A stretch of DNA of 53,639 nucleotides from Octopus bimaculoides (taxonomy: Eukaryota), in assembly GCF_001194135.2 (NCBI RefSeq), contig NC_068982.1:51272544-51326182 (forward strand), given 5' to 3'. The notes under the pieces are model-generated. The model ran no database searches, was not told the origin of the DNA, and saw nothing but the letters and a program-made list of their open reading frames with translations. Positions 201-27,700 of the stretch are shown here, one piece after another (the first letter of the stretch is position 1; each line of letters begins with the position of its first letter). The position numbers and the translations under genes were made by a program.

Positions 201-1712
201 ATTTATATCAGTGGCAACTCTGGCACTTGGGCTGCTTGGGCTTAGCCCAAGTATAAATTTTGTAAAGTGATCTTGTATTTGCAAGCTGATTTAATTTCTG
301 CCAACACTGACTTCAAGTATGTAATTATAGTCAATAACTCGGGCTCCTTTTATTGAGCTTCGTCACAGTATATTTTATTTTTTTGTTCAGCATTTGGCAG
401 TCGTCTTAAAGGTGCCCCGTGTCAAAAAATATCATTCATAGCTGACGTTCTCTCGACTTCGTTCACACATGCCTGACTCAAGCTCTGAAGTTACAGCCTG
501 AGTTGTTATCAATAATCATAAAAATTAAAAGTAATTCAAATTTAATGTTTTCTTGAAACAATAAATTTCTATAGAGATTAGGATTTAAATTCCCAATTTA
601 TGAAAAGTTTCCGTTCTACAATATTCTTAAAGGAATGTAAAAATTATCCAGCAACTCAGACTAATACGAACAAGCCTGGTAGGTGTAAAAGACTAACTGG
701 CATCTCTTGTCAAGAATACAGGTGACAGTCAGATCACTGCTGTTTGTTGTGCACCCTGCTATTGTTATTTGATTGCTGTTATTCTGTGCATCTGTGTGTA
801 AAGATCAGTTGTGTTTTGCAGGGTTGCTTTATTTTTACCCTTAACTTAGAAATGGAGAAAGACATAGTCCTAGATATACAAAAACTAGCCATTTGGGGCT
901 AGAAATATTGCAGAAAAACCTGAAATTCTTCAAGCAGGCACGTGTCTTATGCAAAATCTGTTATGAGCCCAAGTGACGATGATGATATTAATATCATTGT
1001 CATCAACTTTGTGTGCATTTTCTATGTTCACATGGGTATGACAATTCAACAGGATTCATTGTCTCATTTTTAGTATAGCTTCTGCGGCTGGATGCACTTC
1101 CTAATGTCAACCACTTCACACAAGGTTTTGGGTGCATTTTTTCATGGCACCAATATACATTTATATATCAGATACAAATTACAAACTATTATTAAGATCT
1201 TCTTTTTTTACCTTCTACCCTTGAATGTTTCTATTTCTTAACATTAGAAAATCTGGTATCATAAATCAATGAAAGAGCATTCAATCAAATTTCATATTAA
1301 AGATCTGATATTAACATATATTACATACGTTAGCAGCACTTACAAGCATGCTACTATATGAAATCTTGATTCTGTTTTGTAAATATAGTTATTTACATTT
1401 TAGCTTATGTTTAAAATGTAAATAGCAATATCTGCACTTATATATCATCCTACTAATTTTCAGTTGATTCATTTATTTTCATTATAAATTTTCTGTACAA
1501 AATGTTTAGTTGAATTATTATATTTAAATATTTTTCATATTCCTAAGTGTTGAACATTAATACTTTTATATATTTCTATATTTCACCTCTTTTCATATTA
1601 AATTGCAACTCATTTACAGTTAATGTTATGAAGATTTTAGACATTTGGTAACCCAAAATGAATCTTATTTTTCCGTTTATTAAATATGATTATAATTTCA
1701 TCTCTTAATCAG

Positions 1713-1748
1713 GGTCCCATGGGAATGAAAGGTGCATCAGGTACTAAG
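1713..1748 (+). CDS. MACIT-type collagen, Gly-X-Y exon (GPMGMKGASGTK)
   Basis: Acceptor tcttaatcag, donor gtaaac, 36 nt, phase 0, four perfect Gly-X-Y triplets. Upstream exons lie outside the window or were not found. Confidence 0.88.
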
Positions 1749-2074
1749 GTAAACTATTTTCTATAATTTTCTTTTCATGGCATTTAAGATATAATTATAC
1801 CAATGAATTATGATTGTGTCTCTTTCATGTATATATTTTTGAAGATTTTTATTAATTATATTTCTGATATTCTTCATATTGTATTCTTTCTCAGCATATT
1901 TTAATAATAAATTAAGAAACAGAACCGTAAAACAAAAGTCCTGTTTATTTTTAGCTGAGAGATACAAAAATTTACATTCTAAAAAAATCACACTGTAAAT
2001 ATTGATTTTGCACATTCAGATTTTCTAACCTTTCAATTGCATGTTTATCGTTTATTTGCCATATATATTATCAG

Positions 2075-2119
2075 GGAGAAAAAGGAGAGAAAGGTGACTA
2101 TGGACCAATGGGATTACCA
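2075..2119 (+). CDS. MACIT-type collagen, Gly-X-Y exon (GEKGEKGDYGPMGLP)
   Basis: Acceptor attatcag, donor gtaagt, 45 nt, phase 0, five Gly-X-Y triplets. Confidence 0.92.
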
Positions 2120-2367
2120 GTAAGTTCTGAAGATGCATGCACTGTCAACTGGATGTATTCAATGGAATCTAATAAAATAATTTTCTTTCTCTTTGTGATT
2201 ATTTGTAAAATCTATTCTATAATCCTTCTTATATTCTGTTATATGAGTATTGTTTTTGCTTGTTTATTGTAGCTTCTGTTATTCTATGTACTTGTCACTT
2301 TATGTAAACTTTCTATTTCTATCAAACTCCATTTTATTCTCTGTTCACACATATAGCCTCTCTTCCA

Positions 2368-2430
2368 TTCTCTTTCCCTCACTCTCTCTCTCTCTCTTTC
2401 TTTCCATCTCTCTCTTTCTCTCTCTCTCCA

Positions 2431-2477
<47 letters not shown>

Positions 2478-2489
2478 GTGTGTGTGTAT

Positions 2490-2542
<53 letters not shown>

Positions 2543-2548
2543 TATATA
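2368..2548. repeat. Compound (CT)n-(TA)n-(TG)n microsatellite
   Basis: Directly visible. It explains the ORFs at 2250 and 2345. Confidence 0.95.
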
Positions 2549-3794
2549 ATGTTTATTTTGGAGCATGTTAATATATGTGTGTGTACATTTCTTATTCATT
2601 TGTGTTTAAGACCTCTGGTAAAGTAACACAGGCAGACAGAATAAAATTATTGTCCTATTTCTGATTTAATACTAAGCCTTATAAGTAGTTTCCTCTATAT
2701 ATAATACACCAAATGCATCTGTATTTGCATAAGATCCTAAGTAACTTTGCTCGACTCTTAAAACTGGTCATGTGATATCTCATGCAAACTAAATGTATAA
2801 AATGAATTTTAGGACTTGAAGGATTTTGAACAAATATAGTTATTAGAATTGGGAAGCTAACATGGTTCTGTTCTAGCATAAATTGTTTAGAAAATACTTA
2901 ATACCAAAGTGATTTCGCAACAATGTAGAATCTGATACCAGTATAAGTGATACTTGCCTTGAGCTCTTTCAATCTGCAGTGTATTAGACAAGTTATTGTA
3001 AATACGTTTTGATATCATAATTAAATAACTCCCCCAAACACTATGTATTTTATATTATTTCACAAATAATTTTCCTCTTAATTTTTTGCATCTTTCTATA
3101 TATAACATAATTATTCATCTTCAAGTGTTATGTCCAATTACTTAACATTTGATTTAACTTCATCTCTATTTTTAGAATCTAGTATTCTTATGTAAATTTG
3201 CTTAAGATATTTTTTGTAGCCTAAAATATTCAATCTGACTTTCATCCAATATTTCAACAGTTCAAATGTTATGAATACTTGAGTTTCAGTTTATAATTTT
3301 CAGTTCCTTGAATTTGAATTTATTGCCTTCAGATATTAGCATTTATTCAGATAAAATGCATCTAGATTAAGAGAAATATACAGCATAAATTTAACTATAT
3401 GAACTTAAAAAATATATATATGGAGTCGATTAACAATTTATCTAAGAAGTTATTTTAAAATATACAAAAACAGTACATTTCTTTACCTAGTTCTATACAA
3501 TTTTCTTATAATCATGCATGCAAATATTATTCCATATCTAGCTAAGGAAAATAACTTTCTTCTGGTTATATTTTCTCTAAATGCGAGACAGTTGATTCAG
3601 TTTTAAAATCTCTTTTTGATAAAAGTAGATGATTTCAGTCTTGGAAATGAACAAATACAATTCATTTTTACTAGTTTATTCATTTCATACAACAATTTAT
3701 ATAAATTTTTATCTTAATAAATTCATTGGCATGCTATTATTTATATATAGTTACACTTTTGGATACATTCAATGTTGCATGTAATTTCTTATTA

Positions 3795-3800
3795 ATGATG

Positions 3801-3863
<63 letters not shown>
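3795..3863. repeat. (AAT)n microsatellite
   Basis: About 20 perfect ATA/AAT units. It explains the poly-Ile ORF at 3726. Confidence 0.95.
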
Positions 3864-3865
<2 letters not shown>

Positions 3866-6479
3866 CAACTTTCATGGAATGAATAAACATTTTGTAAAAA
3901 TGTCAGCATGGAAGACAATCTGAAGATTGTCTTGCTTACTATCAGCACTGTTATGTCACTGAATATTGACTCTTTGGATGCACTTATGACTTAAACCTGG
4001 AAATAAAGTTCATTAAATCACTTCTAGGCCTTTCTTAAGTTGCAAATAACACCAGATTGTAAAGAAGACTGCAATTGAGAGGTGTGTATTGTCTAGCTTG
4101 TTACTGCAATTTCCTACTATATTCATGTACAGAGAAATTTAGTAGAGTGGGAGAAACTTCAGATTCTACTTACAAGTTTCATTTTTGAGCCGCTGATTTT
4201 CTCATATTTTCAACTTAAATGTTAAATATAAATCTTATTTCAATTTAATGACCATACAGCTATAGAATTGTATATTATCGATTCTCTAAAATTGTGTCTG
4301 ATTTAGAAATCCTTCGTGATTTTTAATAAAGATAATGGCAAAGGATCAGGTTTGACCTTTCCCTTATATCCGCAATGGCTACAGTAATTCCTCAATTATC
4401 GCGGGTGTTATGTTCCATCCCCACCCCTGAGATAGATGAAAATCCACGAAGTAAAAACAGTATGTTTTTGCGGGGGTTTTTTTTTTTGTAATTTGTGTAT
4501 ATATTTTTTTATTATAAAGGCAAAACAACACCACAGAGGAATTGATGTAAGCTTAAATAATAGACTACGATAGGTGAACCGTGATATGGCGAGAGATTAC
4601 TATATTTTATTTTTCTTTCTGCAAGTGTTACAGATGCTCGCAAGTAATTATAATCCTCTAATGAAGAGAGCTCCAAAAGTTTATTGTAGAAAAATCCGAT
4701 ACAAGCATCAGCATGGTTCAGTAATTTTTTTCTACTGCAGGTTTTCTCACTTGTTCTAAATGCCTATTTTTGTCTGCAGTTTACTTTTATTTTTTTCTGA
4801 CCTTTACTTACTGGGTCTTCACAGCTGTTAATTTTCTTAATTCACATAATTCTTTGTGTCTCCCTCAGTGCTAAAGAATGATAAATGTTCAGTTTGAAGC
4901 AAATGAAATATGTATTTTATCTATTATTTTCTTTTTGTAAAAGAATGGGAAATTTCAAGGAACATAACTCTAATTCGCCTTGAGAAGAGTTGTGTTTCTT
5001 GATTATAACTACAAGCTAATTTTTATGAAACTCCCAGGAAAATATTTTTATTGATTCAAGCGTTTGTTTTATGGTTATAAGAACAACTCTTATTGATTCT
5101 TTAATTATTAGCTTCATATTCTACTGTCACCAAATAAATAGATCATTTCTTTTTATGCAATTCTAGCTATAAGTGGTTCATTTATGATAAAAGCCAACAA
5201 TGACAATTTATATACTTCTGATAAAATTTCCAAATTTTATTATAAAGATTTAAAGACTGATTGCCTTCATTGATAAAATCAATATTTCATATTTAAACGT
5301 TAAAATTTTATAGATTTCTGTGTTTTCTGTTTGTATTTTTTATTACAATATTTTTTTTTATGTTCATTTAAAATAATATACATTTGCAACATTTGTTTAT
5401 CAAGTAATATTTAATTTTTGTTAAGGTAAACACCTGAAAAATTAATTTTGTTACACTTAAGAATATCCATCATTAATAGTAGAATAGGACTTAGTATTAT
5501 AAAATTTTATATTTGAGTTAATGTTGTGTATGTGTGTGTGTGTGTGTAATCTTCCATCCTTTATGAGCTGGACAGTCATGCTCTAGTGTCTGCTTTGGTA
5601 TGGTTTCTATTGCTGGATGCCCTTCTTAATGCTTACCACTTCACAGAGTATGCCAGGTGCTTTTCATAGCACCAGCACTAATGAGGTTGCCTTTCAATTC
5701 ACAAGGTGAAGATATATATCACACAAAGACACACATGTACATATACACATGTACTCATGTGTGTATGTGTATAAATATATATTTATATATGTATATGTGT
5801 GGTGTGTTTATATATGTATATTTCACTATGACCATCATATCAACATCTCATTAGACACTCTTCCATGCTTGTATGCAAAAAGTTTTCTGTGACCAGATGT
5901 TCTTCATATTTTCAACTTTTTTCACCTGTTTGCAAGCAAGGTAATATTTCCCCTAGTTAGTTTGATACAACATTGAAATGGTTGAGCATGTTTTCACAGC
6001 AGATTGCAAATTGACACTATTTGTATAACACAATAAGCAGTGTCAAGACGAGGTTGAACGAACACACGTGCATACATATATATGGGTTTCTATCTATTTC
6101 CAATTACCATATCAATTTATAAGGCTTTGGTCAACCCAAACTATAGAAAATGACACTTGCCCAAAGTACCATGCAGTGGGACTCTTGGCTAGGAACTTCT
6201 CTTGCAGTTGTCTCAATATGATGAGAGAATCAAAGAAATGCATCTTGTCTAAGTGGGTTGTGTTCCTAACCAAGTGTGCTAAGACTTACTTTCATAACTT
6301 AGTCCATCAGTTTCATACCTTCTGAGATGCTTCTTTCTAGAGCACCTCATTTACTCCTATAACAGTTGATGATTATAATACTGCTGTGCTAGTTATTAGG
6401 TATAACATTTCCCTGTATAATTTGGTTATCTGAGGAATTTCAACCATGTTTCGTGGTCTGCTACCACAACAGCTCCTTT

Positions 6480-7700
6480 ATAGGATCCAGTTAGCTCAAG
6501 ACATCATCAGGAGGAACCACGTCCGGTTTCGGCCCCTACTCCTCTATCGTTTTGATGTGGCGGGGCCCCCCCTTTCGGAATTGTCTTCAGCTCTGGTGTT
6601 GGGTGCATGTCTCCTTTCTTCCATTCCCTGGCCTCTTCGATGCAGCATCAACGAGTGTCAGCGTCCAACTGACTGTCTTGTCAAATTCCCCTTTTTATAC
6701 CTGCAGCTAGGCTCCAGCAGGCTGCCCCAGCAAGTTGTCACGTGACACTGTCTAAATTTNNNNNNNNNNCTGTCTTGTCAAATTCCCCTTTTTATACCTG
6801 CAGCTAGGCTCCAGCAGGCTGCCCCAGCAAGTTGTCACGTGACACTGTCTAAATTTCCCGCTGCTAGGGTCCAGTAGGCAGCCCCAGCAAGTTGTCACAT
6901 GACACTGTCTAAACTACCCGCTGCTAGGCTCCAGCAAGTAGCCCCATCAAGTTGTCACATGACACTGTCTAAACTTTAACTGACAATGGAGGGCGCATAA
7001 TCTTAGCCCACACATGCTCTAACTAAGACTGTCACCTGTCAATCAGCGAAGCCACTTCAGTGTCAGCCTGTCTCACCTAGNNNNNNNNNNNNNNNNNNNN
7101 NNNNNNNNNNNNNNNNNNNNNNNNNNNNNNNNNNNNNNNNNNNNNNNNNNNNNNNNNNNNNNNNNNNNNNNNNNNNNNNNNNNNNNNNNNNNNNNNNNNN
7201 NNNNNNNNNNNNNNNNNNNNNNNNNNNNNNNNNNNNNNNNNNNNNNNNNNNNNNNNNNNNNNNNNNNNNNNNNNNNNNNNNNNNNNNNNNNNNNNNNNNN
7301 NNNNNNNNNNNNNNNNNNNNNNNNNNNNNNNNNNNTTCTCTGCACTCTTCGATTAGTTTCTCGTATCTCTTCTCCTTTCGTTTCTCTGCATTTTCGATGT
7401 TTTCTTCCCATGGTACTGTCAGTTCTAGCAAGATTCCTATTCTCTGTTCTGTGTTCCATATGACTAAGTCTGGTCTTTTTGTTGTTTTTATTAGTGGAAA
7501 AATTGCTAGACTTCCCAAATCCGTGGCCAGCTCCCAGTATCCCTTCCATCTTTCGTCTATCTCGTATATTTTATTTGGAGGCCTGACCTTATGTCCTTTT
7601 CCCTCCTTCTGGAAGTATATTTTCCTGCGTTTTTCCACTTTGGGGTACTCTCCCCTATTGTATCCCTCGATCTTATCAGTCTTTCCCTCCCCTCACCTCC
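6480..7700 (-). mobile_element. 5'-truncated non-LTR retrotransposon with restriction-like endonuclease (HERO/NeSL/R2-type), C-terminus plus 3' UTR
   Basis: The ORF 7063-7638 contains RPDLVIW...ILLELTVPWEENIENAEKRKEKRYEKL, a PD-(D/E)xK REL endonuclease motif. ELTVPWEE is typical of HERO-clade elements from memory. Stop at 7063 is followed by a GC-richer 3' UTR. It is interrupted by an N gap and the boundaries are approximate. Confidence 0.8.
6797..6975. repeat. Three 60-bp tandem repeats in the LINE 3' UTR
   Basis: The period is exactly 60 (lines 6781, 6841 and 6901 align). Each unit contains tgtcac(g/a)tgaca. Confidence 0.9.
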
Positions 7701-8329
7701 TTACTACATGATCTGTCCATTACTTCATATCTACATATCCCTGTCTCATACATTCTTCATTCCACCTCTTCATCCCTCTCTTTAGTCTTCTTCCAGACCC
7801 TTCCAATCCATCAAGGATAGCTCTAAGCAGAATCACTATAAACCCTGGATACTTTAGTCCTGAAGACAACCTCTGTAGCACTGGTAACACAAAAAAGTGC
7901 ATCTAGTCCATATCGTAGAGTGGTTGATGATAGAAAAAGCATCTAGCTAAATTCATGAACACTCCAATGCAATGATGTGTGTGTGTGTGTACATATATGT
8001 TTAAACTGAGGAATAGATATAATCAATTTCATCATTTAATTTTGCATTAGTGAATGGTTGTATTTTACTAATTATGTGTCTGATTTTTGTTTTATTTGTT
8101 TTATGTAAGTATTTACCATTTAAAGACTATAATGAAGTAGCCCAACTAATCTTTCTTATTAACACACACAAAAAAAAACACTGATTCTAACCTGCATTTT
8201 ATTTTTTCCAATACTAATTTTAATCATTATTGAAATTTCATACATTGATTTTAGAATTTGTTTTCATTGTTTAGTATTACTCAATTTTGGCTTTGTATAT
8301 ATATCTCTCTCTCTCCTCTCTCTCTCTCA

Positions 8330-8380
<51 letters not shown>

Positions 8381-8660
8381 GAAATTAAACTCAGAATTTT
8401 TTTTTGCATATTAAGTTTGATAACTTTTTTAATGGTTACGTATATCTCAGATTTACTTACATCCATTTTGTTATTTTATTAAACTTACTTTTTATCATAA
8501 ATAGTTTAAACTGTAACTTTACAATTTTATTAACAAAGAAAATATTGATTTAAATATGTAATGCTGTGAACAAAATATATAACAAAATATTAAATCTAAT
8601 ATGTAACAATAAAAAAGAAAAATCATTCAAATGACTAAATTACTATTTCTATCCTTACAG

Positions 8661-8756
8661 GGTCCTCCTGGTCCAGCAGGTATCCCTGGATTTGCTAAAG
8701 ATGGAGCTCCTATATGTGCTTGCACTAAAGGAGAAAAAGGAGACCAGGGCAAGCCT
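8661..8756 (+). CDS. MACIT-type collagen exon with non-collagenous CxC interruption (GPPGPAGIPGFAKDGAPICACTKGEKGDQGKP)
   Basis: Acceptor atccttacag, donor gtatgt, 96 nt, phase 0. Confidence 0.93.
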
Positions 8757-9229
8757 GTATGTAGATTTCCACCCAATTTATAATTTTGTGTAATTGCTTG
8801 TTTTTATGTGCTAATTAACTGTTATTGGTGTAAGAGTCAATTTTGATTTTGTTCATCAATTATACATTAATTTAAATGTGAGTTGTACAGAAACTAATGC
8901 TAAAATAAACAGCTTTTTTTTATTTAGTGGAATACATCATCTAAATTACACTCGTTGGTAGAGTACCTCTTCCTCTATAGTAAGTCTTCTTCCTGTTCTT
9001 CATTGCTGGCAAATAATGAATTCTAAGCAGAAGCAACCTGTTATCATTAGTTGTTGATAAGGGAGGGGTGCAGGCTCTCCAACCTCCACAGAAGGTTACA
9101 GATTGTATACAGAGATGGTGCTGTTGACAAAAAACAAAGTACATAGATGGACAAAGTTGAAAGAAAAGGAATATGCAGTGTGAGAACATCAGCTGCAGTC
9201 ACTGACATGAATTGCTGGTGAGTGGAAAT

Positions 9230-9910
9230 ATTGATTTGAGCTAAAAGACAAGTCACAATCTGTGAACTTGAGGCACAACCCTGGGTTCAGTCTACAATGC
9301 ATTATAGAAGATGATGGAAGACTTTGGATATTGGAAAGTGTGTGTGAAGTGGGCATCTTGGCTGTTGACAGTTTGAAGGAGAGAACAATGAAAAGTCTAC
9401 TTTGATCTGCTGGAAGTGTTGGAATCCAATGAAGCTATTTTTTTTTCTGATCTTATGACAGGGGATGAAACATGGGCAGATCTTTATAATCTGGAATCAA
9501 AGGCTCATTCCATAGTATGGTATCAAATCTTTTCTCCAAGGCCTAAGAAGTTAAAAGAGCCAGTGACCAAAGCAGAAAGTCATAGTGGTTGTATTTTGGA
9601 ATGACACAATCATCCTCCTTGATTTTTTGAAATGTCAAAGTACCAAGAACAATGCATTAAGATAGTCAAAATGCTTAGAGCAACCATTAAAAAGAAGAGA
9701 CCAAATATGAATCTGAAAATGATCCTAGTTCACCATGGCAATGCATCACCACACACATCTTTAACAATAAATCAGGCAGTCAGCAAATTAATCCCCCATG
9801 TAGACCTGATCTGGTAGTCTCCAACTTCTACTTCTTTGGTCTAATGAAGGATAATCTTCAGGGACAGTGTTTTGACAACACAGATATGGTGAAAATGATG
9901 GTGAAGAAGT
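9230..9910 (+). mobile_element. Mariner (DD34D-type) transposase relic
   Basis: Frameshifted fragments LMTGDETWADLY (DETW motif), ILVHHGNASPHT (HDNAxPH-like) and a degenerate PDL...FYFFGLMK region (YSPDLAPSD-like). Boundaries are approximate. Confidence 0.8.
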
Positions 9911-11142
9911 GAAGACTATGTCAATTAAGTAACACCTGTATGGAGGAAGAATTACCCTACTAACATGCACAATTTGAATGACTTATATCAGTTGTTACAA
10001 AAGTTATTCCCAATTTTGCATTATTTTTTATCCAACTCTTGTGTAAATGTATAGTACCTTGATATCCTTATTTTCAAATATGTTAACTATTTGTTATTCC
10101 TAATCAATATACCATTCTTCTTAAATGCATTTCTACTACTTATCGAAATCATTTTGTTGGAATTCAATATCCATCAAGTAATTTCTTTCCAGTGTTCCCT
10201 CATTTGTCCTCATTTTCATCTGATGTGCGTGTCTAATAATCTGAATTAAGCTGTCATCACAATTGTCTTTCATATTCTCAAGAAATAATTTCATTACACT
10301 CTAGTAATTTAGAGAACTGCCTATCTCAGAGTAATATTTAATCTTTGTGAACATGAAAGAAATTATTAAAAATCAAAAATAAATTTCTTATACAACACCT
10401 TGTCATAAAATTTGATTTTAGTGATGCTATGCCAAACTTAGTCACTGCCTATGAATTGACAGAAACTTTGTTGGAATCTAACCTAATTTTAGAGATATGC
10501 TGAAACATTAAACACAGTTTAGTAGTAAAAGTATATTTACTACTGTTAAATGTATCCATTATTTTTTAAAACAATTCTTACTAGTTCCTTGTTTTATTAT
10601 TTCTACATCATTAGCACTTATACAGGATTAATCTACAATTAATCCTAATATTCTACTTGTAATGAGATCAATATTAATAGTATAAATTTGGAAATGATAG
10701 TAATTGAAGTATTTAAATATAATTCCATTTGATTTACTGTCCTTTTTCTTTGCCACTAAAGAACATTTAAATATGATTTAATAAAATAATAATTGTTCAA
10801 CTGTAGGTTCCTTGCTACATACAACAATATTAAAAAAATACATTATATTCATTTAATTAAGGCAGTGGATAGCAAAATTCTTAGAGCAGTATTTAGTTAC
10901 ATCACTTTACTACATTTTCAATTCAAAATTCCATCAAGGTCAACTTCATTTTTCATTCTTCTTGGATTCATAAAATAACGGCCATTCAGGCACTAGAATT
11001 GATTTAATCAACTGCATTCATACCCACCAAGTTTGTGGCCTTGTATTATACTAGAAATTAAAATTCATTTAATTAAAAGGAAGACATTTTATAACATTTG
11101 TAATATGGCTTGTAAGATTTTCTTTTCCATTCTTTATTGCAG

Positions 11143-11178
11143 GGAATAAATGGACTCAATGGCCCTCTGGGATTACGA
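11143..11178 (+). CDS. MACIT-type collagen, Gly-X-Y exon (GINGLNGPLGLR)
   Basis: Acceptor ctttattgcag, donor gtaaga, 36 nt, phase 0. Confidence 0.9.
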
Positions 11179-11939
11179 GTAAGAAAATTTCATGTTATAA
11201 TTAATTGTTTTCTATTATGCAATTAAGTGACCAGATTGGTCTTCATATAACCTCTACAACTGAGACTAAATATTGTGAAATTGTTACCTCATTTCTATAC
11301 TCAAATTAGTTGCATTTTACATTTTGTTTTATTTGTGAAACTCAACAAAATACAAACTCCACTGACTGACAATTTGACTACTTAGCAATAAGAAAGACGT
11401 CCGACTCTAAAATCCATCCAACAATAAAATTACTGTTGATAAATATAAATCACTAAAAAATACTGAGTTCTCACATTTTCATTCCTTTTTGTTTGCTTTC
11501 TTCACACAAACACACACTCACATCTGTGTGTGTCATAAACACACACATCTCTGTTAGTGTGTGTGTGTGTGTGTCTCTGTTTCTATTGATAAATAGACAA
11601 CCATACAGATATGAAAGAAACTCTGTTCAAAATTGTAAACATATTTTCCAGTCATTTTTTTTTTTTTTCCTATTCATCTTTTATTACAATAAGTATGACA
11701 ATTATTTTCTGAAATAAAGCAAAATAGGTAGTAAAGTATCCAAGAAATTCATATATCTTTATTTAATGATAATGAAGAATTTCTTTTGTTGCAAAAGATG
11801 TACATTTCAATTCTAGATCATTGTATACTTTTGAAATTCTTGCATTACATGTACTTACAGGTTTTCCTGTTAATCACATAAGTGTTAATGCTAGCAATAT
11901 AACAAGACTTCATTATCATGTGTCATACTCTGTTAGAGC

Positions 11940-12200
11940 CATGGTGATCACTTTCTTCCAATGATCTATTGACAGTCAAATTTCTTCATTTCTGATGATG
12001 AGGCTGGTCCACTTCTTGATGTTATTGTTTAGGTTATCTTCTGCTAATCTCAGGAGAGAATTCCTACCACATTACCTCCTCATACATTATTCCAGCATAT
12101 CATCAAGTTCTTGAGATATGTTCAAAATAGCAAAGTTATCCTTTGGATAAGTGTTCACAGAAGTATTGCTTTCATGGCAATCTTTTCTAGTATGAAATTT
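11940..12200 (-). mobile_element. Highly degenerate RTE-like LINE 3' end
   Basis: Minus strand gives NNIKKWTSL...DHWKKVI, resembling the end of RTE ORFs (DNIKEWTGL...W). Many stops. Confidence 0.4.
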
Positions 12201-12599
12201 TTGGATCTCCTTTAAATGTACACCATCAGGATTTGCCTGCATGTTCACATCTCAAATACTATCAACTAGTTTTCATCAGTTGTTTCTAGGGTTCATATGG
12301 ACGTGTGTGTGTGCATAAGAGAGAGAATGAGTGAGTGAAGGTGTGTGTTGTCATGTATGTGCAAGTGGCACTCACTCAGCCTCTTTCCCTCTCTCACACA
12401 CAAGCACACATCTTACAGATACACATAAATAAATACATATGCATACATCTTTTTTTTGTATATATGTGTGCATGTGCATGTGAGAGAAAGAGTAGGTGAC
12501 TGTATTTCATCATAACATATAGAGAAATGGATGTCATTTAAGATACACACTCATATAGAAAATGTGACGTCATCATCATGGTATAAAATGTTTACGTTA

Positions 12600-12852
12600 G
12601 TTGACTTATAGAAAAGATTATAATGTAAAATTTGCATAATGCAACACTTTTACACCCCTCTCATTTTATCATGTAATAGCCCAACCCCCATAGTTGGCCC
12701 ATTATCAAATTTTATTGAAGTCCAATTGGCCTATAATTGAACTGGGTGTTAGTTCAACATGTATACAAAGTTTGGTGAAGATTGGTTTCCTGGTTTGGGC
12801 AGCAAGATTGTAACAGACAGACAGAAATTACCATTTATATATAAGATTAGAA
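12600..12852 (+). mobile_element. Probable non-autonomous Helentron/HINE-like element end
   Basis: Ends in aagtttggtgaagattgg...acagacagacagaaattaccatttatatataagatt, a terminal layout typical of HINE/DINE-like elements as I recall it. Confidence 0.45.
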
Positions 12853-13215
12853 TTAGTTTGGTTTACTTATTTGTTGTAAATGCTGCTTTTAGTCTGTCTT
12901 TTGCTTACATGTTCTGTATTGTTCTCTCTTTCATGATTCAACAAAGGTAACCAAAAATATTTTGCTTTTTGACATATATTTTGTATTAATTTATGAATGA
13001 TATTTCAGTCACTCATTTTCAATTGGTTAGAAGTATACAATAAACATTTCACAGTGGAATTGAACCAGTGAGTGTGTTAGATATTGAGACAGTATGACTC
13101 TCCCCAGACACAATAAAATTTCACAATTTATATCTATTTAAAGAAAAAAATAGACTTTCTATATTCATATTCAATATTACCCTTTATCAAAAATAATCTA
13201 CAATATTCCATTTAT

Positions 13216-13605
13216 AGGCGCAGGAGTGGCTGTGTGGTAAGTAGCTTGCTTACCAACCACATGGTTCCGGGTTCAGTCCCACTGCGTGACACTTTGGGCA
13301 AGTGTCTTCTACTATAGCCTCGGGCTGACCAATGCCTTGTGAGTGGATTTAGTAGACGGAAACTGAAAGAAGCCTGTCGTATATATGTATATATATATGT
13401 GTGTGTGTCTATGTTTGTCCCCCCAACATCGCTTGACAACCGATGCTGGTGTGTTTACGTCCCCGTAACTTAGCGGTTCGGCAAAAGAGACCGATAGAAT
13501 AAGTACTAGGCTTACAAAGAATAAGTCCTGGGGTCGATTTGCTCGACTAAAGGCGGTGCTCCAGCATGGCCGCAGTCAAATGACTGAAACAAGTAAAAAA
13601 GAGAG
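13216..13605 (+). mobile_element. tRNA-derived SINE, family A, with internal (TA)n/(TG)n
   Basis: Head aggcgcaggagtggctgtgtggtaag...gggttcagtccc (A/B-box-like) and A-rich tail. A second copy lies at 52283-52704 and a partial one near 6085-6190. Confidence 0.85.
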
Positions 13606-13720
13606 TAAGTGAGCATAGTAGAGCAATAATATGTGGTGTCCTTTAATTAAGAAATTGTGTTGGAAAAAATCAATATCTTTTCACTGAAATTTACAAAAAA
13701 TTGTAAATTTGTACTCTCAG

Positions 13721-13774
13721 GGACCCGCTGGACCTAAAGGAGTTAAAGGTGATGTAGGTGCAACAGGACCACGT
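13721..13774 (+). CDS. MACIT-type collagen, 54-nt Gly-X-Y exon (GPAGPKGVKGDVGATGPR)
   Basis: Acceptor actctcag, donor gtaagt, canonical 54-nt collagen exon, phase 0. Confidence 0.94.
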
Positions 13775-14753
13775 GTAAGTAACTTTTTTTATGCTCAACC
13801 AACTAATATTTATTGTGAATACTTTAAATTATTGTTTGGTTACTTACAGCATATATTATAACAATTTTGTATGCTCTTTCTTTATTACCTTTGTTTTAAC
13901 TCATGCTTGATTTACTTTAAATTATGGTGATCTTAGTTTAAATGAGAAAAGTGTATACTTTGTTGTATGCAGAGGATTCCATGCTGGTAGAATCAGTAAT
14001 AGAATGTCGGCAGCAATTTCAACAATAAAGATGTATTACTGAAGAGAAAAAAAAACCTCTTGTTCTATTTTGAAAGTCATTGAAGAGTAACTGGATGGGA
14101 TATTTCATGGGAATAACCAGCCTCATTATTAGCATTGGCAATTTTGTGGTCAATCTTTTCTCCAATTTAAAACATAAATATTAAGTAAAAAAAAATGTTG
14201 TTAGCTAACAAATCTCTACAATTATACTGAATCTTTGTTGAACTTTACCTAAAGTTATTGTGGTTGTAGGATTGAAATGCTAAACTATTGATCAAAATCT
14301 TGCTACAGCCAGTATGTTGAATTCCTTTCTAGACAAGATATGAAATTTTTGCTTGCTTGAACAACAAAAGGATATTTCAGTCTTCATGTTTGATGGTAAC
14401 AAGTGCATACAGCTATTAAATAATTGCTCTTATTCCAAGCAAACTAGTACTTAAACATGATGGAAAATTGTATTAAAAGTGAATAATGTTGAAACTAGCT
14501 TTGCACTAATAAATACCAATTGAGTAATTTAAAAAATTATGAAGAATAAAACTAAAATACAAAGAAAAAAACTTTATCAAATAATTATCTTCTTATTTCA
14601 TTTAAATTTGAAACATGAATTTTAAATTGTTCAATTGATATTGATAATGAAATAAAGAAAAGATTGATAATATGGAGAACTGTATTAATATCAAAACCTT
14701 TATGCATTAACCATTTCAAATAGTTTAACAATTTGGTGGAACTCTTGTTTCAG

Positions 14754-14807
14754 GGACCAAAAGGTAAAAGAGGCAGGCGTGGTGGAAAAGGAGAAAAAGG
14801 AGACCAG
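14754..14807 (+). CDS. MACIT-type collagen, 54-nt basic Gly-X-Y exon (GPKGKRGRRGGKGEKGDQ)
   Basis: Acceptor cttgtttcag, donor gttagt, phase 0. The basic run followed by GEKGDQ matches the end of the last collagenous domain of MACITs. Confidence 0.93.
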
Positions 14808-15359
14808 GTTAGTAGGTTCTATTTTATTAAATATTAATACTAGTAGGTTTATCTTGAAGCATAAATTACACTCAATGCATTCATTTAAACATATCATGCA
14901 CTTATGCACTTTTAAAGCTAACTTAAATTTTTTTCCCCTAAAATTTACAATATTGTACTAAAAACCTATTAGGCTTTGAGATTTATAATGTTTGTGTGTG
15001 GTACAAACGTTTTATTTTTGTTTTTATTTTCATCCCTTTTACCCACTTCATTCTAACTCTTTTATATTCTAAAATTTACCATAACTTGGTTGCTGGTACT
15101 ATATACTTAGTTTGATATAATAAATATAACAACTAAAAAGATTAAATATATATAAATAAAATATGTTCAGTGAATTTAAGCCATATGGTTTCATGGAATT
15201 TAACTCGCTAGTTTAGGATAAACTTATCTAATGTTTCAAGAATTAGCAATTAGTTTATTTAGAGTTTTATAGAAATAAGGGTTCCAACCAGGCTATGGTA
15301 TAAGGAGTATCTAAGTGATGGCTGCTTATTATACTGCCTACCAATAATCAATCCTACAG

Positions 15360-15443
15360 GGGATTCCTGGCTTAGATGCTCCATGTCCTGTTGGACCAGA
15401 TGGCTTACCTTTACCAGGTTGTGGGTCACATCATCCAGCACAG
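15360..15443 (+). CDS. MACIT collagen (XIII/XXIII/XXV, COL-99-like) C-terminal NC domain exon ([28 protein letters not shown])
   Basis: Acceptor atcctacag, donor gtaaac, 84 nt, phase 0. GLDAPCPxGxDGLPxxGC is the conserved MACIT C-terminus (from memory, human COL13A1 [21 protein letters not shown] and COL23A1 [21 protein letters not shown]). Confidence 0.93.
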
Positions 15444-15512
15444 GTAAACTGTTTTTGCATGTTTCTTGCATGGATGGTAGCAGCATGTGCATGTTTGTTG
15501 ATAGTCTTCCAG

Positions 15513-15558
15513 CATAGACATACTTGTCTATTTGGTCCTACTGGTCTGCCACGCCCTG
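15513..15558 (+). CDS. Candidate cassette exon with a second copy of the MACIT C-terminal motif ([16 protein letters not shown])
   Basis: Acceptor gtcttccag and donor ctg/gtaatg. It is in frame with the previous exon across a 69-nt intron, and C-x-x-G-P-x-G-L-P-x-P-G matches the upstream motif. Confidence 0.55.
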
Positions 15559-18159
15559 GTAATGGAACCTTCAAGTTTCAACATTCAGCTTACCATCAGC
15601 ATTTTCTAAATAGAAAATATATACATCAAACTTATTTTGTTAGACTGAAAATTATTTACTTAAACATTTCATAAGTCGCATAATACTTTTTAATTATAAT
15701 CATTATAGATATATTTAAAGAAATATAAGAAAAGATTTATTTCTTTGTTCTTATAAAAAATTATATGATATTGGATTAATATCTCATAATCAAATAAATT
15801 AAATAACTGTTTTTATTTTTACTTTTGTAATATCAGTAATATAACTGTATTTACTGAGCCTAAAAAAATCTAGATGACAATAAATATATTTCAACATTTA
15901 ATTTGCTATTTTTTCAATTCATTTTAAATAAATTTTTATTAGCATATAAGCATCACAATAACCTTTTTAACATAACATCAGTTTAATGATAGACTATTCC
16001 ATCTGTAAATGTAATATTTAAAAGCTTATTGACTATTTCAATTATAATAAAAGAATTTGTGTGCCATTTGTGCACATGTGTATAAAACAAATCAGATGTA
16101 ATTATTTTAAAGTGTCTATCTAGTAGTTTAAATAGATGGAGTTTTTAAATATTTATAAATATTTAGATTTGTCTTTTTCAAGCTACTAAACTTGTGCCTT
16201 TTGAATTTAATACAACTAATTTCAACAAAAATTAATTGTTAACAGCTTGATGTTAAATGTAAAATAAATTACTGTTATAAAATCTAGTAAACTCCATAAG
16301 GTAAGTACTAGCATGACTGTCTTCTCATACATAATCAAAATGCTATTCTTGCTGTAATCACATTACAAACACCTGAATCATTTGCACATGCATACATCTT
16401 GCATTTAAACACAAGTTTTTCAACCTAAATTCCCAGCACACTAAGCACGTTACTCTAAAAATTAGTTTCAGTGATATATTTGTTTCATTTATTGCTGTCA
16501 TGACTGGCAAGATTTTTCAGCATAGAATCAATTTTTATCAAAGTTAAGAAGTCAAATGAAAATAAAAACTACTCATCTATTAAAGTATATTCATTTCCTT
16601 TGCTAATAATTTCATAAAATTGTCCATTTCATATGATTACATTGATTTCAGGAATTTCTGTTTGGGTTTTAGCTTCCTGACTTACTTTATATCTAACTAC
16701 ATACTCTCAGAATTTGAAACAGGAAGAAATGTGGTGGTCATTGGATCAATTCCTAGTGTTTCATATAATTTTTTTTTTAAATGTATAGTTCTGTGGCAAA
16801 AGTATCTACTGATACTTATGTATTATGTGAAATATTTATTTATTTTATAAGAGGAACTTCATAGTTTTTCTTCTTGAATATTTTTTATTAACTTCTTAAT
16901 ATTTATTGCTTGTATTATTGAAGAGCATGAATTTCACCCCTAAAAATCTGAGGATTCGTCCTTATATTAGAAACAGTATACCGATATTAAAAAATGGCAT
17001 GTAAATTTTACTTATGCAACTTTCAAACTATGCTTAATTTTTTTTTTTTTTTAATGGTTTGTCTATTTTTCATATTAACATAAATAACTCTGTAAATTTA
17101 TTTGAATAAAGTGTTGCAGTATGAGTTTTGCTGCAGCAATTTAATATTCAAGTAGACCTGTCATAGCTATTTTCAGCTCAAGTGTCCTCAAACCTAAAAG
17201 CAAAACTAATTATCTAGTTCTTATGACGAGCATCTTTATCATTAACTTTTATATAGATCTATTATTATACTTTTGTAAGTTTGAAGTAACATAAAACCAA
17301 AATTTCATTTAAAAAAATATAATTGCTTTTATTTGTAATTTCTTGGTACCTGCTTTTAAAGATAAGTGTACTTCATTTTATTATCTTGTGTAAGCATATT
17401 TCTTAATGGATATTTGAGATAATTTTTTATTAATAAATAAATGTTATACCAATCAATAAGAAATCAGGTTTATTATTACTATAACTGAAGATGAGCAAGT
17501 TCAATCCAATACTGATGAACAGACTTTTGGTGTAAAGACTATGATATGCTAATGAGATATTATAAAGAGTAAAATAGTTGAAATCTTAGTTTGTCAACTT
17601 TATTAATAACAATATATGAATATTAGTTTTACGTTCATGATAGCTGGTTTGGCATAATTTTTGCAGCCTGGAGCAAATATTTTTACAGCCTAATAATTTT
17701 TACATCAACTGCACAACTGAAAATAAATAGTATGAACAATACATGTCATTTCTCTTTATATATAACTGATGATAATAGCGATGATTTCTTTCTTCATCAA
17801 AAAAGGCTATTCTTCATAACTCAAATAGTTATTGGTAACTGAATCAATTCTAGTACATAGTAATGTATGATATATTGATTTCTAATGAAGGTTTGAAGCT
17901 TCACACTTTAGTGGAAAGGAATAGCTGATGAGATCAACCCCACTCAAACTTATTTTACTGATCCTAAAAGGCTGAAAGCCAGTCAGCCATGGCAAAATTT
18001 GAATTCCGGACATAAAGAGATATAACTAAATACCATATGGCACTTTCTCCATCACCCTGGTTGTGCTAATCTACTGCCCACAGGGTACAATGTTAATTTT
18101 CATTGTTTTAATCAAAGTCCAGAGTGCTGATCATAACACAAGTCTCGCTATAACCTAAA

Positions 18160-18227
18160 TAGTAGTAGTAGTAGTAGTAGAAGTAGCAGCAGCAGTAGCA
18201 GTAGCAGCAGAGGTAATAGTAGTGGTG

Positions 18228-19640: not shown

Positions 19641-19802
19641 GTTTTTACCAGCTTAAATCCATCAATGACTGCTGAACCAACTAAAATGACTTCTTCTAGT
19701 TCCATAAATGAGGAGAAACTTAGTAATGGCCCTGTTTGTGTGTATTTCTTTATTTGGTTCGATGTCTTATGCAATATTCAACTCATAATACTTCTATCTT
19801 AA
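19641..19802 (+). CDS. Candidate terminal exon of the collagen: Ser/Thr-rich stalk, SNG and hydrophobic tail
   Basis: Strong acceptor cttcttttcattcactgcag. Phase 0 reads VFTSLNPSMTAEPTKMTSSSSINEEKLSNGPVCVYFFIWFDVLCNIQLIILLS*. A possible internal donor cct/gtttgt follows 19733. No transcript evidence. Confidence 0.5.
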   Translation, partial: VFTSLNPSMTAEPTKMTSSSSINEEKLSNGPVCVYFFIWFDVLCNIQLIILLS

Positions 19803-24714: not shown

Positions 24715-27700
24715 TTCTCTCTCTCCCTTCTCTCTCTCTTTTTCTCATGTATGACTAAAATTTTAAACTTAATGTATTCCTAAAATCGTTATGAATATTC
24801 CTAAATAATCTACCTCCTTAAAGAGGTAAAATCTACTTTCCATCACCTACTCCATCTGCATGTTATTTATTCTGGTGTTACAATAACCAATTGCCAACTC
24901 CTGTCGACATTTATCATTAGGTAATGCAGCATGTGGTCAAAGCACCTACTCTCTTGCTACTTTTTCTGTTGTCTCATTTATTTATCTTGGTAATATGTTA
25001 TCTCTCTTGCTTCAATATAAACAACCCTTCTCCAAGATTAGTTTTTCCAAAACAGAATTGATATAAGATAGTGAGTGCCCATCATATTACAAAATTACTG
25101 ATGCTACAATAAATACATTCCAGTCTCTTCTTTTATTTCATGATGGTGTCTACTAATTCAGCTAAATGAAATATACTGTACTAGAAGCCTGCCCAAACTA
25201 TGATAGCATGAAAAAGATAACAGCTGTTAAAATGAAAATATTATTGGTGTCATTTATATCTTATTTTCCTAATTAAATATAGTTGTTTGTAATGTTTAGT
25301 AATCTTTATTTCTTACCCTTAACATGCTGATTTACCTTCCTTATTCAGTTTTATATTGAAGATAAAACTATTGGTACATATCTTATTTTTTTCTTTCCAA
25401 CCATTCTTTTTTTCCTATTAACTGCCCACAGCACTTCAATATCATAGAGCCAGGTCATGATATGGAGACAAAAAAAAACTTATGTTGTCCCTTACAAAGA
25501 CTTAACAATTTTGTCTTCATTTTTAAACATTACTAGCTGCCTTTTGATAACTTTTACATCAGCTTTCTTTAGTATGATTTTGTTTTTCAACTACCAGTGG
25601 TATATTGGTAATATCAATGTTTTACATTTTTTCAAAACAAGTTAGGTTTTAATGATAAAAACCATGCTTTAATAGTATGTAATATTTCTTATTAGATACA
25701 AATGATATTTTTGGCTGGAAATATCAAGTTTACATTTCATTCAACCCAAGAAATAAGTCTCATTTATTTTTCCATACCAATGAACATCTCAGATTCTCCT
25801 CACAAGGAAATATTGAAATTTGTTTCCCCTCGTGTTATTGTAAATATTACACTCAAAATACTTTTCTACTTCACTAAATAATATATTGCCTTATAAGTCC
25901 TTTTATAACATTACAATATAAGGCTCTGTCTGTGTGTGTGTGTGTGTGCGTGCGTGCATGCTTGTGTGTGTGTGTGTGTGTGCCCATGTATGTGTGTTTG
26001 TTTTCAATTTCCAAAAGCTACTTGCATGTTGTTTGTTTTTCAGTTTTCTTCCTTTCATATTATCCATTTTTTTTTTTGTTTTGTTTTGTTAAAAAATGAT
26101 AATCAAGAGCTTAATTATTGCATGAAGTGTTGCCATTCTTCAATTCTATATGTTCGTTGCCCTGCAGGTAACCAGTATATACTTTGGTCAGTTGAGTCTA
26201 ATTCAGCTGCTTTTTTTGTTTTTCCTTTTTTTATGAATTTTTTATTTGAAACATAAAATTTGCTATATTATAGGATGTTGTAACTACATTTGTAAATGCT
26301 ACATCAATATTTCTTCTTCCTAAATATTCTAAACCTTTAGTCAATAGATAAATTTATCAAATGGCCCAGATAAATGCTTTTATTAAAATACAGTTATTTA
26401 TAGTCATGCTTTTGGCCAACACACTCATATACTGTCCATATCATTAAGTGCTTTCATTCATGCAAATTAAAATAAATCATTTAGAAGTGTAAAACTTGCA
26501 ATTATATATGTAGAGAGAGAAGTGACACACACACAAGTATGTATACACACAGATGTTTGTGTTTGATACCCATATTTAACTCCTATGATAAATAACAGTA
26601 AATTTATTATTACTAATTATACATTTAAATCTAAATCTATATTCCTTAAACAGAATGTAAAGGTCTTAAGTATCAGATATTGTGTTAAGATTTAATGTTT
26701 TTAAAGTAATTATTGTCCTTTTCTTTTCCTTTTTCCAGTGATCCAGGAATAAGCTTATTTTAAATGGCCCAGCTGTATATAATGAAAGTAAAAGAAACAA
26801 AAAGACTGAGTAAATTACACTGTAAGCAGAAATGTCATTGTCCAAGTAATGACAGACCAGGATACAAGAATTTTCTGAACTTGCCCTATGCATAAAAGGC
26901 AAGCATCAAGTATGATCCCATCATTTTGACTGTGTGAATTGGAGAGAAACATAAAAAAACAACAAATAACTAAATATAAAAAAATCATGCATGAAAAAAA
27001 AGGAACATTTTCTAACTGTGTTCATCAATCAGTCATTTCAATAAGCATTTTACAGAAAATAATTATGAGCATCTTATTGTAAATAATTGTTCAAATACAA
27101 AGGATTGTTTAGTGATATATACATCACTAAAGACATAAGAATGGTGTAAATTTTTTTGTTACCTCGTAATGCAGGGATACTGTAGTATAAATAAATAATG
27201 GTTATACTGATGTAAGTTTTGGTTGGTTCTCAAGAATTGTAAGTTAGTCCATAAAACAAAAAAAAAGACTTTTCAGCCTTTACTTACAGAAAAAAAAAAA
27301 AAGCAAAGTTACATTTCCCTTTTTTTTTTTTTTTCATTTCCATTCTTTTACCTCTTTCCTTTAGATATATGTGTTAGATAGCAGGAAAATCATAAAAATG
27401 TTCTTTGTGTTCATTTCTATATAATGAAACAGCTCATTAATTCAAATGACAAGCCCTTACCTGCTGCCTTATGTCTTTATTCTAGTGCTACAGTGCTTCA
27501 CCATGTGCTTTACTTTGCATTTATATGGACAAAAGATCTTGTAATTGTGTGTCTATATATATNNNNNNNNNNNNNNNNNNNNNNNNNNNNNNNNNNNNNN
27601 NNNNNNNNNNNNNNNNNNNNNNNNNNNNNNNNNNNNNNNNNNNNNNNNNNNNNNNNNNNNNNNNNNNNNNNNNNNNNNNNNNNNNNNNNNNNNNNNNNNN

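What the first reader, a model, noticed from the sequence alone, without database searches (positions are those of the whole stretch)
1713..15443. A MACIT transmembrane-collagen gene in what looks like a mollusc (octopus) genome
Seen: seven phase-0 exons splice into a continuous Gly-X-Y frame ending [28 protein letters not shown]. Established: this C-terminus defines collagens XIII/XXIII/XXV and C. elegans COL-99, which act in axon guidance and at neuromuscular junctions. From memory, the survey that named the MACIT family reported them in ecdysozoans and some deuterostomes but not in Lophotrochozoa; this recollection should be verified. Inference: the repeat landscape is octopus-like, so this could fill that phylogenetic gap. 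The exons are too small for the ORF track to show.
Basis: partly seen in the sequence, partly recalled or inferred. Interest (0 to 1): 0.75.

Follow-up and report, generated by a model that had tools for sequence, protein, structure and literature searches.

The report
Mollusc membrane-collagen (MACIT) gene, 3' half
The window holds the expressed, heavily alternatively spliced 3' half of a collagen XIII/XXIII/XXV/COL-99-type (MACIT) gene from what is most likely an octopus. This contradicts a 2015 claim that molluscs lost the family, but clam and scallop copies are already annotated in public databases, so it is a useful correction rather than a discovery.

Summary
Seven + strand exons (1713-15443), all AG|..|GT and phase 0, give a 135-aa Gly-X-Y peptide ending [22 protein letters not shown]. 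Shuffles predict 0.035 such runs per window; six are seen. RNA contigs support every junction. E2 joins E3 directly, so the two N gaps, both in intron 2, do no harm.

The gene continues beyond the finding: cassette exon E8 (19641-19737) and terminal exon E9 (from 26739, beginning with TGA). E1, E2, E7 and E8 are optional. The most abundant transcripts in two runs are E3-E6 joined to E9. These lack the hallmark C-terminus and end ...GEKGDQ*.

The C-terminal 44 residues are 57-75% identical to named MACITs of arthropods, a nematode, fishes and bivalves, with the same C-x11-C spacing. Tu et al. 2015 did report no MACIT in Mollusca, Annelida or Lophotrochozoa.

RefSeq already holds bivalve "collagen alpha-1(XIII) chain-like" proteins with a transmembrane helix, interrupted collagen domains and this C-terminus.

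The N-terminus (transmembrane helix, furin site) lies outside the window and could not be tested. The species could not be named because run labels are coded. Verdict: a new member of a known kind, of moderate to low interest.

The parts
1713..1748 (+). E1, 36 nt, GPMGMKGASGTK; cassette exon
   Evidence: AG/GT flanks, phase 0. E1>E2 joint in X46 and X48. Absent from the dominant transcripts of X13 and X25. Two different upstream exon ends join it, neither found in the window.
2075..2119 (+). E2, 45 nt, GEKGEKGDYGPMGLP; cassette exon
   Evidence: The loose end behind 2120 equals the start of E3 in X46 and X48.
6760..7335 (.). Two assembly gaps (6760-6769, 7081-7335) with a 60-bp tandem repeat (6795-6975) between them, all inside intron 2
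   Evidence: RNA joins E2 to E3 across them. Two other upstream exon ends that join E3 are not in the window, so an exon hidden in a gap is not formally excluded.
8661..8756 (+). E3, 96 nt, GPPGPAGIPGFA-KDGAPICACTK-GEKGDQGKP; holds an 11-residue break of the triple helix with a C-x-C motif; constitutive
   Evidence: E3>E4 joint at depth 3779 (X13) and 325 (X25). The C-x-C + KGEKGD motif before the last collagen domain is shared with 3 of the 4 bivalve proteins; the fourth, Mya, has CKCEKGDKGD. It is absent from the arthropod and vertebrate MACITs examined.
11143..11178 (+). E4, 36 nt, GINGLNGPLGLR
   Evidence: E4>E5 follows from contig length bookkeeping (X25 843-nt contig, X48 432-nt contig).
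13721..13774 (+). E5, 54 nt, GPAGPKGVKGDVGATGPR
   Evidence: E5>E6 joint in X13, X25, X34, X42, X46, X48 and X49.
14754..14807 (+). E6, 54 nt, GPKGKRGRRGGKGEKGDQ; basic KRGRR stretch conserved in MACITs; branch point for three alternative 3' splices
   Evidence: Joined to E7, to E8 and to E9. Alignment.
15360..15443 (+). E7, 84 nt, [28 protein letters not shown]; the MACIT C-terminal signature with two Cys (C-x11-C); cassette exon
   Evidence: E6>E7 joint in X46-X49. E7>E8 in X46 and X48. E7>E9 in X47. Its 31-mers are held at 100% by RNA or likely-RNA runs under nine organism codes plus an 'invertebrate metagenome'. No spliced coverage in X13, X25 or X34.
19641..19737 (+). E8, 97 nt cassette exon, VFTSLNPSMTAEPTKMTSSSSINEEKLSNGPV + 1 nt; gives a non-collagenous C-terminal tail ending ...LIQE* when read into E9
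   Evidence: AG/GT flanks. Joints E6>E8 and E7>E8. E8>E9 loose end in X48.
26739..27553 (+). E9, terminal exon; begins TGA (an immediate stop after E6 or E7); 3' UTR reaching at least the gap at 27563
   Evidence: Polypyrimidine tract + AG at 26737-26738. The loose ends before 26739 are the ends of E6 (X25, X13), E7 (X47) and E8 (X48), and coverage runs to 27553.

Best explanation
Window 1713-27553 (+) is the 3' part (nine exons) of the MACIT gene of a mollusc, most likely an octopus. [quoted passage not shown]

Shown here:
- The gene is transcribed and spliced as predicted.
- It encodes Gly-X-Y collagen interrupted by a C-x-C-containing break.
- One isoform class ends in the family-defining motif GLDAPCPxGxDGLPxPGC.
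- Four C-termini arise by including or skipping E7 and E8.
- E1 and E2 are also optional.

Inferred by homology with the bivalve proteins and with published MACIT biology:
- The unseen 5' exons encode a short cytoplasmic tail, a type II transmembrane helix, a trimerising coiled coil and a juxtamembrane basic cleavage site.
- The protein forms a membrane-anchored homotrimer whose ectodomain can be shed by furin-type convertases.
- It acts in nerve-muscle contact and axon guidance.
- Optional use of E7 would switch the conserved two-cysteine C-terminal knot on or off.
For: - Exon anatomy and chance test.
- RNA joints for all exons.
- Pfam Collagen hit, E = 5e-16.
- C-terminal motif hits at E = 1e-16 to 1e-8 in a 5.8-billion-protein database. 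They are dominated by MACIT-type proteins: XXV of fish and bat, CG42342 of insects and Limulus, and spider, tick, mite and nematode proteins.
- 25-33 of 41-44 identical positions and the same C-x11-C spacing.
- Family criteria and conservation statements in Tu et al. 2015.
- Bivalve homologues carry an N-terminal hydrophobic helix (19-residue Kyte-Doolittle mean 2.5-2.7), C-x-C at the NC1/COL1 border, 4 collagen runs, a second C-x-C before the last collagen run as in E3, and the same C-terminus.
- A contig from another species (L001) has the same exon layout: a 54-nt basic exon followed by the C-terminal exon in phase 0.
Against: - The N-terminus is outside the window, so transmembrane topology and the furin site are untested for this gene.
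- One upstream end joined to E1 reads ...K-M-E-P-K-S-E-N-S-L. It could be an alternative start giving a non-membrane isoform.
- The conserved Trp after GC(G) is missing (GCGS instead of GCGW). The bivalves Mercenaria and Mya, Heterodera and Seison also lack it.
- In the highest-depth runs the transcripts lack the signature exon.
- No protein named for a cephalopod was returned by any search, and the species label is coded.
Confidence: 0.85

Rival explanations
1. A secreted, or otherwise non-membrane, collagen that only shares the C-terminal module with MACITs. The gene would then work as an ordinary matrix collagen rather than a type II membrane protein.
For: The N-terminus was not seen. Four different upstream exon ends feed into E1 or E3, and one contains an in-frame ATG nine codons before E1. 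The dominant transcripts lack the MACIT motif altogether.
Against: Every near-full-length named protein carrying this motif that was examined and is not visibly truncated at its N-terminus has an N-terminal hydrophobic helix. These are 4 bivalves, 2 copepods, Limulus, Glossina and Seison. E3's C-x-C + KGEKGD break matches the membrane-anchored bivalve proteins. Vertebrate MACITs and COL-99 are also extensively alternatively spliced (section list).
Confidence: 0.08
2. The window is not from a lophotrochozoan, for example it comes from an arthropod or is a contaminant scaffold. The gene would then be one more ecdysozoan MACIT with no bearing on the phylogenetic gap.
For: The organism name is hidden. 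Over the 44 C-terminal residues the window is slightly closer to tick and moth (32-33/44) than to bivalves (29-30/44).
Against: - The second C-x-C immediately before the last collagen domain occurs in the four bivalves and in the window, but in none of the arthropod or vertebrate sequences.
- The 13216-13600 repeat is, from my memory only, the abundant octopus SINE.
- Runs of 'organism A' begin in 2015 with a genome plus a multi-sample RNA study, and several sister 'organisms' share 36-48% of intronic 31-mers. This fits the Octopus genus but does not prove it.
- The exon is also held by a run labelled 'invertebrate metagenome'.
Confidence: 0.06
3. A decayed or unexpressed gene fragment, or an assembly chimera across the N gaps.
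For: Nine N gaps in the window, many transposon fragments, and small exons.
Against: RNA contigs of at least nine runs carry the exact junctions, including across the gaps, at depths up to 3779.
Confidence: 0.01

Closest known systems
Bivalve RefSeq models 'collagen alpha-1(XIII) chain-like' (Mercenaria mercenaria P0272, Pecten maximus P0274, Argopecten irradians P0276; Mya arenaria P0275, named 'alpha-4(IV)-like')
   Same: C-terminal KRG(K/R)(K/R)G...G.[19 protein letters not shown] at 29-30/44 identity. A second C-x-C before the last collagen domain, followed by KGEKGD as in E3 in three of the four (Mya has CKCEKGDKGD). Many predicted isoforms (X15-X25).
   Different: In the bivalves only about 30 residues separate the C-x-C from LDAPCP; the window has 70 (E3 tail, E4, E5, E6). 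The bivalve tails after GC are GWNKPP... or YYE...; here the tail is GSHHPAQ with or without the E8 tail. The bivalve N-termini are known; here the N-terminus is unseen.
C. elegans COL-99 and arthropod MACITs (Drosophila CG42342/CG43342)
   Same: Single invertebrate-type MACIT. The C-terminal motif is conserved. A non-collagenous extension of about 30 residues beyond the motif is typical of invertebrates, and E8 provides a 36-residue one. Extensive alternative splicing. Extra R-x-K/R-R sites inside the ectodomain, such as RGRR in E6.
   Different: The Trp after GC(G) (WKP/WCS/WRP) is replaced by Ser. The signature exon is optional here. No functional data exist for any mollusc.
Vertebrate collagens XIII, XXIII and XXV
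   Same: The last 34 residues, with two characteristically spaced Cys, are the most conserved part of the family. The window matches fish XIII-type and XXV-type sequences at 25-28 of 41-44 positions. Small phase-0 exons of 27-54 nt are typical of this gene family (from my own knowledge).
   Different: Vertebrate proteins end W(H/N/Q)K directly after GC. They have three paralogues, whereas one locus was seen here.

Membership tests
MACIT (criteria of Tu et al. 2015) | c) Conserved C-terminal motif including two characteristically spaced cysteines | tested here: met
   E7 = [23 protein letters not shown]-x11-C as in all named MACITs compared, with 25-33 of 41-44 identical positions. Database hits at E = 1e-16 to 1e-8.
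MACIT (criteria of Tu et al. 2015) | [quoted passage not shown] | tested here: met
   Pfam Collagen, E = 5e-16. The Gly-X-Y run is broken by the 11 residues KDGAPICACTK in E3. Non-collagenous upstream exon ends (KMEPKSENSL, RKTRSHAPNSQ) join E1 and E3 in RNA. Only the C-terminal 135-171 residues were seen.
MACIT (criteria of Tu et al. 2015) | [quoted passage not shown] | not testable with these tools
   The 5' exons lie upstream of window position 1. RNA contigs reach 853 nt further 5' (X46 1174-nt contig) but only 30 letters of them can be read. Six ORFs of the window were not on record. The feature is met in the bivalve, copepod, Limulus and Seison homologues.
MACIT | Juxtamembrane furin-type cleavage site and coiled-coil trimerisation region | not testable with these tools
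   Outside the window. E6 holds an intra-helical RGRR that fits R-x-K/R-R. Tu et al. note such extra predicted sites in invertebrate MACITs. The bivalve homologues have basic clusters (RRRKDPKR, KHKR) just before the first C-x-C.
MACIT | Trp directly after the second Cys region (W(H/N/Q)K in vertebrates, WKP/WCS/WRP in invertebrates) | tested here: not met
   The window reads GCGSHHPAQ. This is not a strict family criterion: Mercenaria and Mya (GCYYE), Heterodera (YCGDP) and Seison (GCGLP) also lack it.
Lophotrochozoan (mollusc) origin of the window | The source organism is a mollusc | tested here: inconclusive
   Organism labels are coded. Indirect support comes from the bivalve-type second C-x-C, an 'invertebrate metagenome' run holding E7, and the SINE at 13216-13600, recognised from memory as the octopus SINE. 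No hit named for a cephalopod was returned.

The most novel reading that the evidence does not exclude
MACITs were never lost in Spiralia. A cephalopod, four bivalves and the syndermatan Seison all keep one, so the 2015 model (origin in the bilaterian ancestor, loss in Lophotrochozoa) needs correcting. In the cephalopod, the family-defining two-cysteine C-terminal domain sits on a regulated cassette exon that the most abundant transcripts omit. The conserved C-terminus, whose function is still unknown, would therefore be an isoform-specific module rather than an obligatory part of the protein.
Probability: 0.6. Interest if true: 0.45.

Novelty: new member of a known kind. Interest (0 to 1): 0.35.

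Why it matters
The only published survey of MACIT evolution infers loss of the gene in Lophotrochozoa, and a 2021 review still describes conservation only in Ecdysozoa. An expressed cephalopod orthologue, together with the bivalve and Seison proteins found here, shows the gene was retained. That simplifies the evolutionary model and opens the octopus, an animal with an elaborate neuromuscular system, to study of a protein known for neuromuscular-junction formation and axon guidance. The optional use of the conserved C-terminal exon offers a natural experiment on a domain whose function is unknown. The weight is limited, because automated annotation had already found the bivalve genes and absence claims from 2015-era genomes are often overturned.

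Tried and rejected
- The search of protein representatives with the 135-aa peptide. The best 150 were all long generic collagens and none carries DAPCP.
- The search for homologous proteins returns only proteins of about 0.6-1.75 times the query length. This is my inference from lengths of 81-237 aa for a 135-aa query. Padding the last 46 residues with X to 458 aa brought out the full-length bivalve and arthropod proteins. Padding the whole 135 aa to 559 aa was swamped by generic collagens and gave no cephalopod protein.
Sub-stretches worked.
- Six ORFs of the window and Pecten P0274 were looked up with the look-up of encoding contigs, to reach upstream DNA or a named record. None is on record.
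- P0101's contig is an unnamed ENA metagenome assembly.
- Four upstream exon ends were searched in the window, with no match.
- Rfam and tRNA scans found nothing, so the SINE head is not recognised as a tRNA.
- Pfam did not confirm the mariner-like remnant at about 9400-9900. It supported the reverse-transcriptase fragment only weakly, below the curated cut-off.
- Literature: 'MACIT' with Lophotrochozoa, mollus* or protostom* finds only Tu et al. 2015 as relevant. A search for the SINE sequence and one for the RefSeq product name found nothing. Broad searches were uninformative.
- A second C-terminal exon copy in the window was sought and not found.


Full report
**1. The observation**

Reading 1500-17000 and a six-frame scan for runs of four or more Gly-X-Y triplets gave six hits in the 53.6-kb window. 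All are on the + strand and all lie between 1713 and 14807.

With the C-terminal exon they define seven exons:
- E1 1713-1748
- E2 2075-2119
- E3 8661-8756
- E4 11143-11178
- E5 13721-13774
- E6 14754-14807
- E7 15360-15443

Each is preceded by AG and followed by GT, and each is a multiple of three. Joined, they give 405 nt = 135 aa without a stop, ending ...[36 protein letters not shown].

Block shuffles of the window give 0.035 such Gly-X-Y runs on average, and never one with AG/GT flanks. Pfam calls the peptide Collagen at E = 5e-16.

**2. The gaps**

The N runs at 6760-6769 and 7081-7335 lie in intron 2, within a 60-bp tandem repeat and transposon-like sequence.

RNA contigs of runs X46 and X48 pass from the last base of E2 directly into GGTCCTCCTGGTCCAGCAGG..., the start of E3. 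A 432-nt contig of X48 holds E1-E2-E3-E4-E5-E6-E7 and the start of E8 with exactly the predicted lengths. The two sides of the gaps are therefore one gene, in frame.

**3. RNA evidence and the real gene model**

*Joints seen:*
- E1>E2
- E3>E4 at depth 3779 and 325
- E5>E6 in seven runs
- E6>E7 in X46-X49

*Exons beyond the finding:*
- E7 is spliced to a further cassette exon E8 (19641-19737, 97 nt), or directly to a terminal exon E9 that begins at 26739 with TGA.
- E6 can also skip E7 and join E8 or E9.

*The four resulting C-termini:*
- ...GCGSHHPAQ*
- ...GCGSHHPAQ + VFTSLNPSMTAEPTKMTSSSSINEEKLSNGPVLIQE*
- ...GEKGDQ*
- ...GEKGDQ + the same E8 tail

*Isoform abundance:*
- In runs X13 and X25 the contigs with by far the highest depth (about 2600-3800 and 325) are E3-E4-E5-E6-E9.
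- E1, E2, E7 and E8 are absent from them or present only at the level of unspliced background.
- Contig depth is a poor measure of expression, so this is qualitative.

*Upstream exons:*
- Four different upstream exon ends are joined to E1 (...KMEPKSENSL...PGPTGPPGPS) or to E3 (...DGLPGRPKRA...RKTRSHAPNSQ).
- None is in the window.
- The gene therefore continues 5' of the window, and E1 and E2 are cassette exons.
- An exon hidden in a gap cannot be formally excluded for the two ends that join E3.

**4. What it is**

The first protein search returned short gene calls and fragments that share the non-collagen motif. They come from a spider, a bee, mites, Heterodera, Seison, and fish and bat collagen XXV.

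That tool seems to return only proteins of roughly 0.6-1.75 times the query length; this is my inference. I therefore padded the last 46 residues with X. This returned longer proteins: full-length Mercenaria, Pecten and Argopecten 'collagen alpha-1(XIII) chain-like', Mya 'alpha-4(IV)-like' and two copepod proteins, plus partial models lacking an N-terminal helix from Ixodes, an ant and a Papilio 'CG42342' entry.

Over the 44 residues around the motif the window shares 25-33 identical positions with all of them. The spacing is the same, C-x11-C.

Tu et al. 2015 state that the last 34 residues, with two characteristically spaced cysteines, are the most conserved part of the family. They use this motif as one of three criteria for membership.

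The four bivalve proteins satisfy all three criteria:
- an N-terminal hydrophobic helix at about residues 20-48
- four collagen runs separated by breaks
- the C-terminal motif

The bivalve proteins also have a second C-x-C immediately before the last collagen run (DGSCQCSKGEKGD, AEACTCKGEKGD). E3 has the same feature (GAPICACTKGEKGD). None of the arthropod or vertebrate sequences has it. This is the best sequence-based sign that the window is molluscan.

**5. The species**

Run labels are coded.
- 'Organism A' holds the window at 100% in DNA runs from 2015 onward.
- Three other 'organisms' hold 36-48% of the 31-mers of a mostly intronic 2-kb stretch. That corresponds to roughly 2-3% divergence, i.e. 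congeners.
- E7's words are held at 100% by RNA or likely-RNA runs under nine organism codes and an 'invertebrate metagenome'.
- From memory only, the repeat at 13216-13600 is the abundant octopus SINE.
- No protein named for a cephalopod was returned.

I rate a cephalopod origin at about 0.85. It is not shown.

**6. Literature**

Tu et al. 2015 say MACITs 'were not identified in ... Lophotrochozoa' and not in 'Annelida, Mollusca', and they infer loss.

In the searchable library no later paper links MACITs with molluscs, Lophotrochozoa or protostomes. A 2021 review repeats conservation 'as a single gene in Ecdysozoa'.

The correction therefore seems unpublished in that library, but the bivalve genes are already annotated in RefSeq under a collagen XIII-like name.

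**7. Mechanism**

*Shown:* an expressed collagen with an interrupted helix and, in part of its transcripts, the MACIT C-terminal knot; and regulated alternative 3' and internal exons.

*Inferred from the bivalve homologues and from published work on XIII/XXV/COL-99:*
- a type II membrane anchor
- coiled-coil-driven trimerisation
- shedding by furin-type convertases
- roles in motor innervation, neuromuscular junctions and axon guidance; for COL-99 this may act through discoidin-domain receptors

*Speculative:* inclusion of E7 would add the two cysteines. E8 would add the roughly 30-residue invertebrate-type tail described by Tu et al.. What the C-terminus does is unknown even in mammals.

**8. 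Another species**

Contig L001 (an ENA metagenome assembly; E7 is 82% identical at DNA level and the introns are unrelated) has the same 3' layout. It carries a 54-nt basic exon GRRGKRGKKGIKGYKGEQ and then the C-terminal exon in phase 0. It also carries a second, divergent C-terminal exon 1.3 kb downstream, [24 protein letters not shown]...*. The window has only one such exon.

**9. Verdict**

- It is unproven as to species and membrane topology.
- It is overstated as to novelty.
- This is a new member of a known kind. Interest 0.35.

Noticed in passing
L001:4193-11650 (ENA metagenome contig ERZ21939214:ctg7709l): An unnamed other species carries a MACIT 3' end with the same exon layout and two alternative C-terminal exons 1.3 kb apart: [29 protein letters not shown], and [37 protein letters not shown]. 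This suggests mutually exclusive C-termini there.
   Followed up: partly
window 13216-13600: A roughly 385-bp GC-richer repeat (GGCGCAGGAGTGGCTGTGTGGTAAGTAGC...GGTTCCGGGTTCAGTCCCACTG...) in intron 4. I recognise it from memory as the abundant octopus SINE. ARAGORN and Rfam do not call a tRNA in it.
   Followed up: partly
window 1-197: The first 200 bases have very high RNA contig depth (660-3000), and the contigs continue into sequence not in the window. This is probably an expressed repeat or transposon fragment, not part of the collagen gene.
   Followed up: no
window 9400-9900 (+): A decayed mariner/Tc1-like transposase remnant in intron 3 (frames broken...LVHHGNASPHTS......PDLVVSNFYFFGLMKDNLQG...). 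Pfam gave no hit to the stitched fragments.
   Followed up: partly
window 40500-41645 (-), interrupted by gap 40664-41106: A LINE-type reverse-transcriptase fragment (weak RVT_1 hit, 23.6 bits, below the cut-off), flanked by long (TC)n/(AG)n arrays at 40549-40645 and 41655-41951.
   Followed up: partly
window 18160-18420 and 18950-19160: A (TAG)n microsatellite and neighbouring repeats in the intron between E7 and E8 attract enormous RNA depth (up to 44,000) and many chimeric joints. These are repeat-driven mapping artefacts, not exons.
   Followed up: no
window 34005-34451: A 165-bp tandem repeat, 2.7 copies, 92% matching, downstream of the gene. Nature unknown.
   Followed up: no
window 8727-8747 and 14787-14808: E3 and E6 share a 21-22-nt identical stretch, AAAGGAGAAAAAGGAGACCAGG (KGEKGDQG). 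It makes short-read assemblers join E3 directly to E9 or to E6 in some contigs (loose ends). This is a source of false isoforms.
   Followed up: yes
P0008 (Seison nebaliae, 226 aa): A miniature MACIT-like protein with a transmembrane helix, RVRR, C-x-C, two short collagen runs and GLDAPCPTDADGLPIPGCG. It shows the family in Syndermata, another spiralian lineage outside the ranges listed by Tu et al. 2015.
   Followed up: partly
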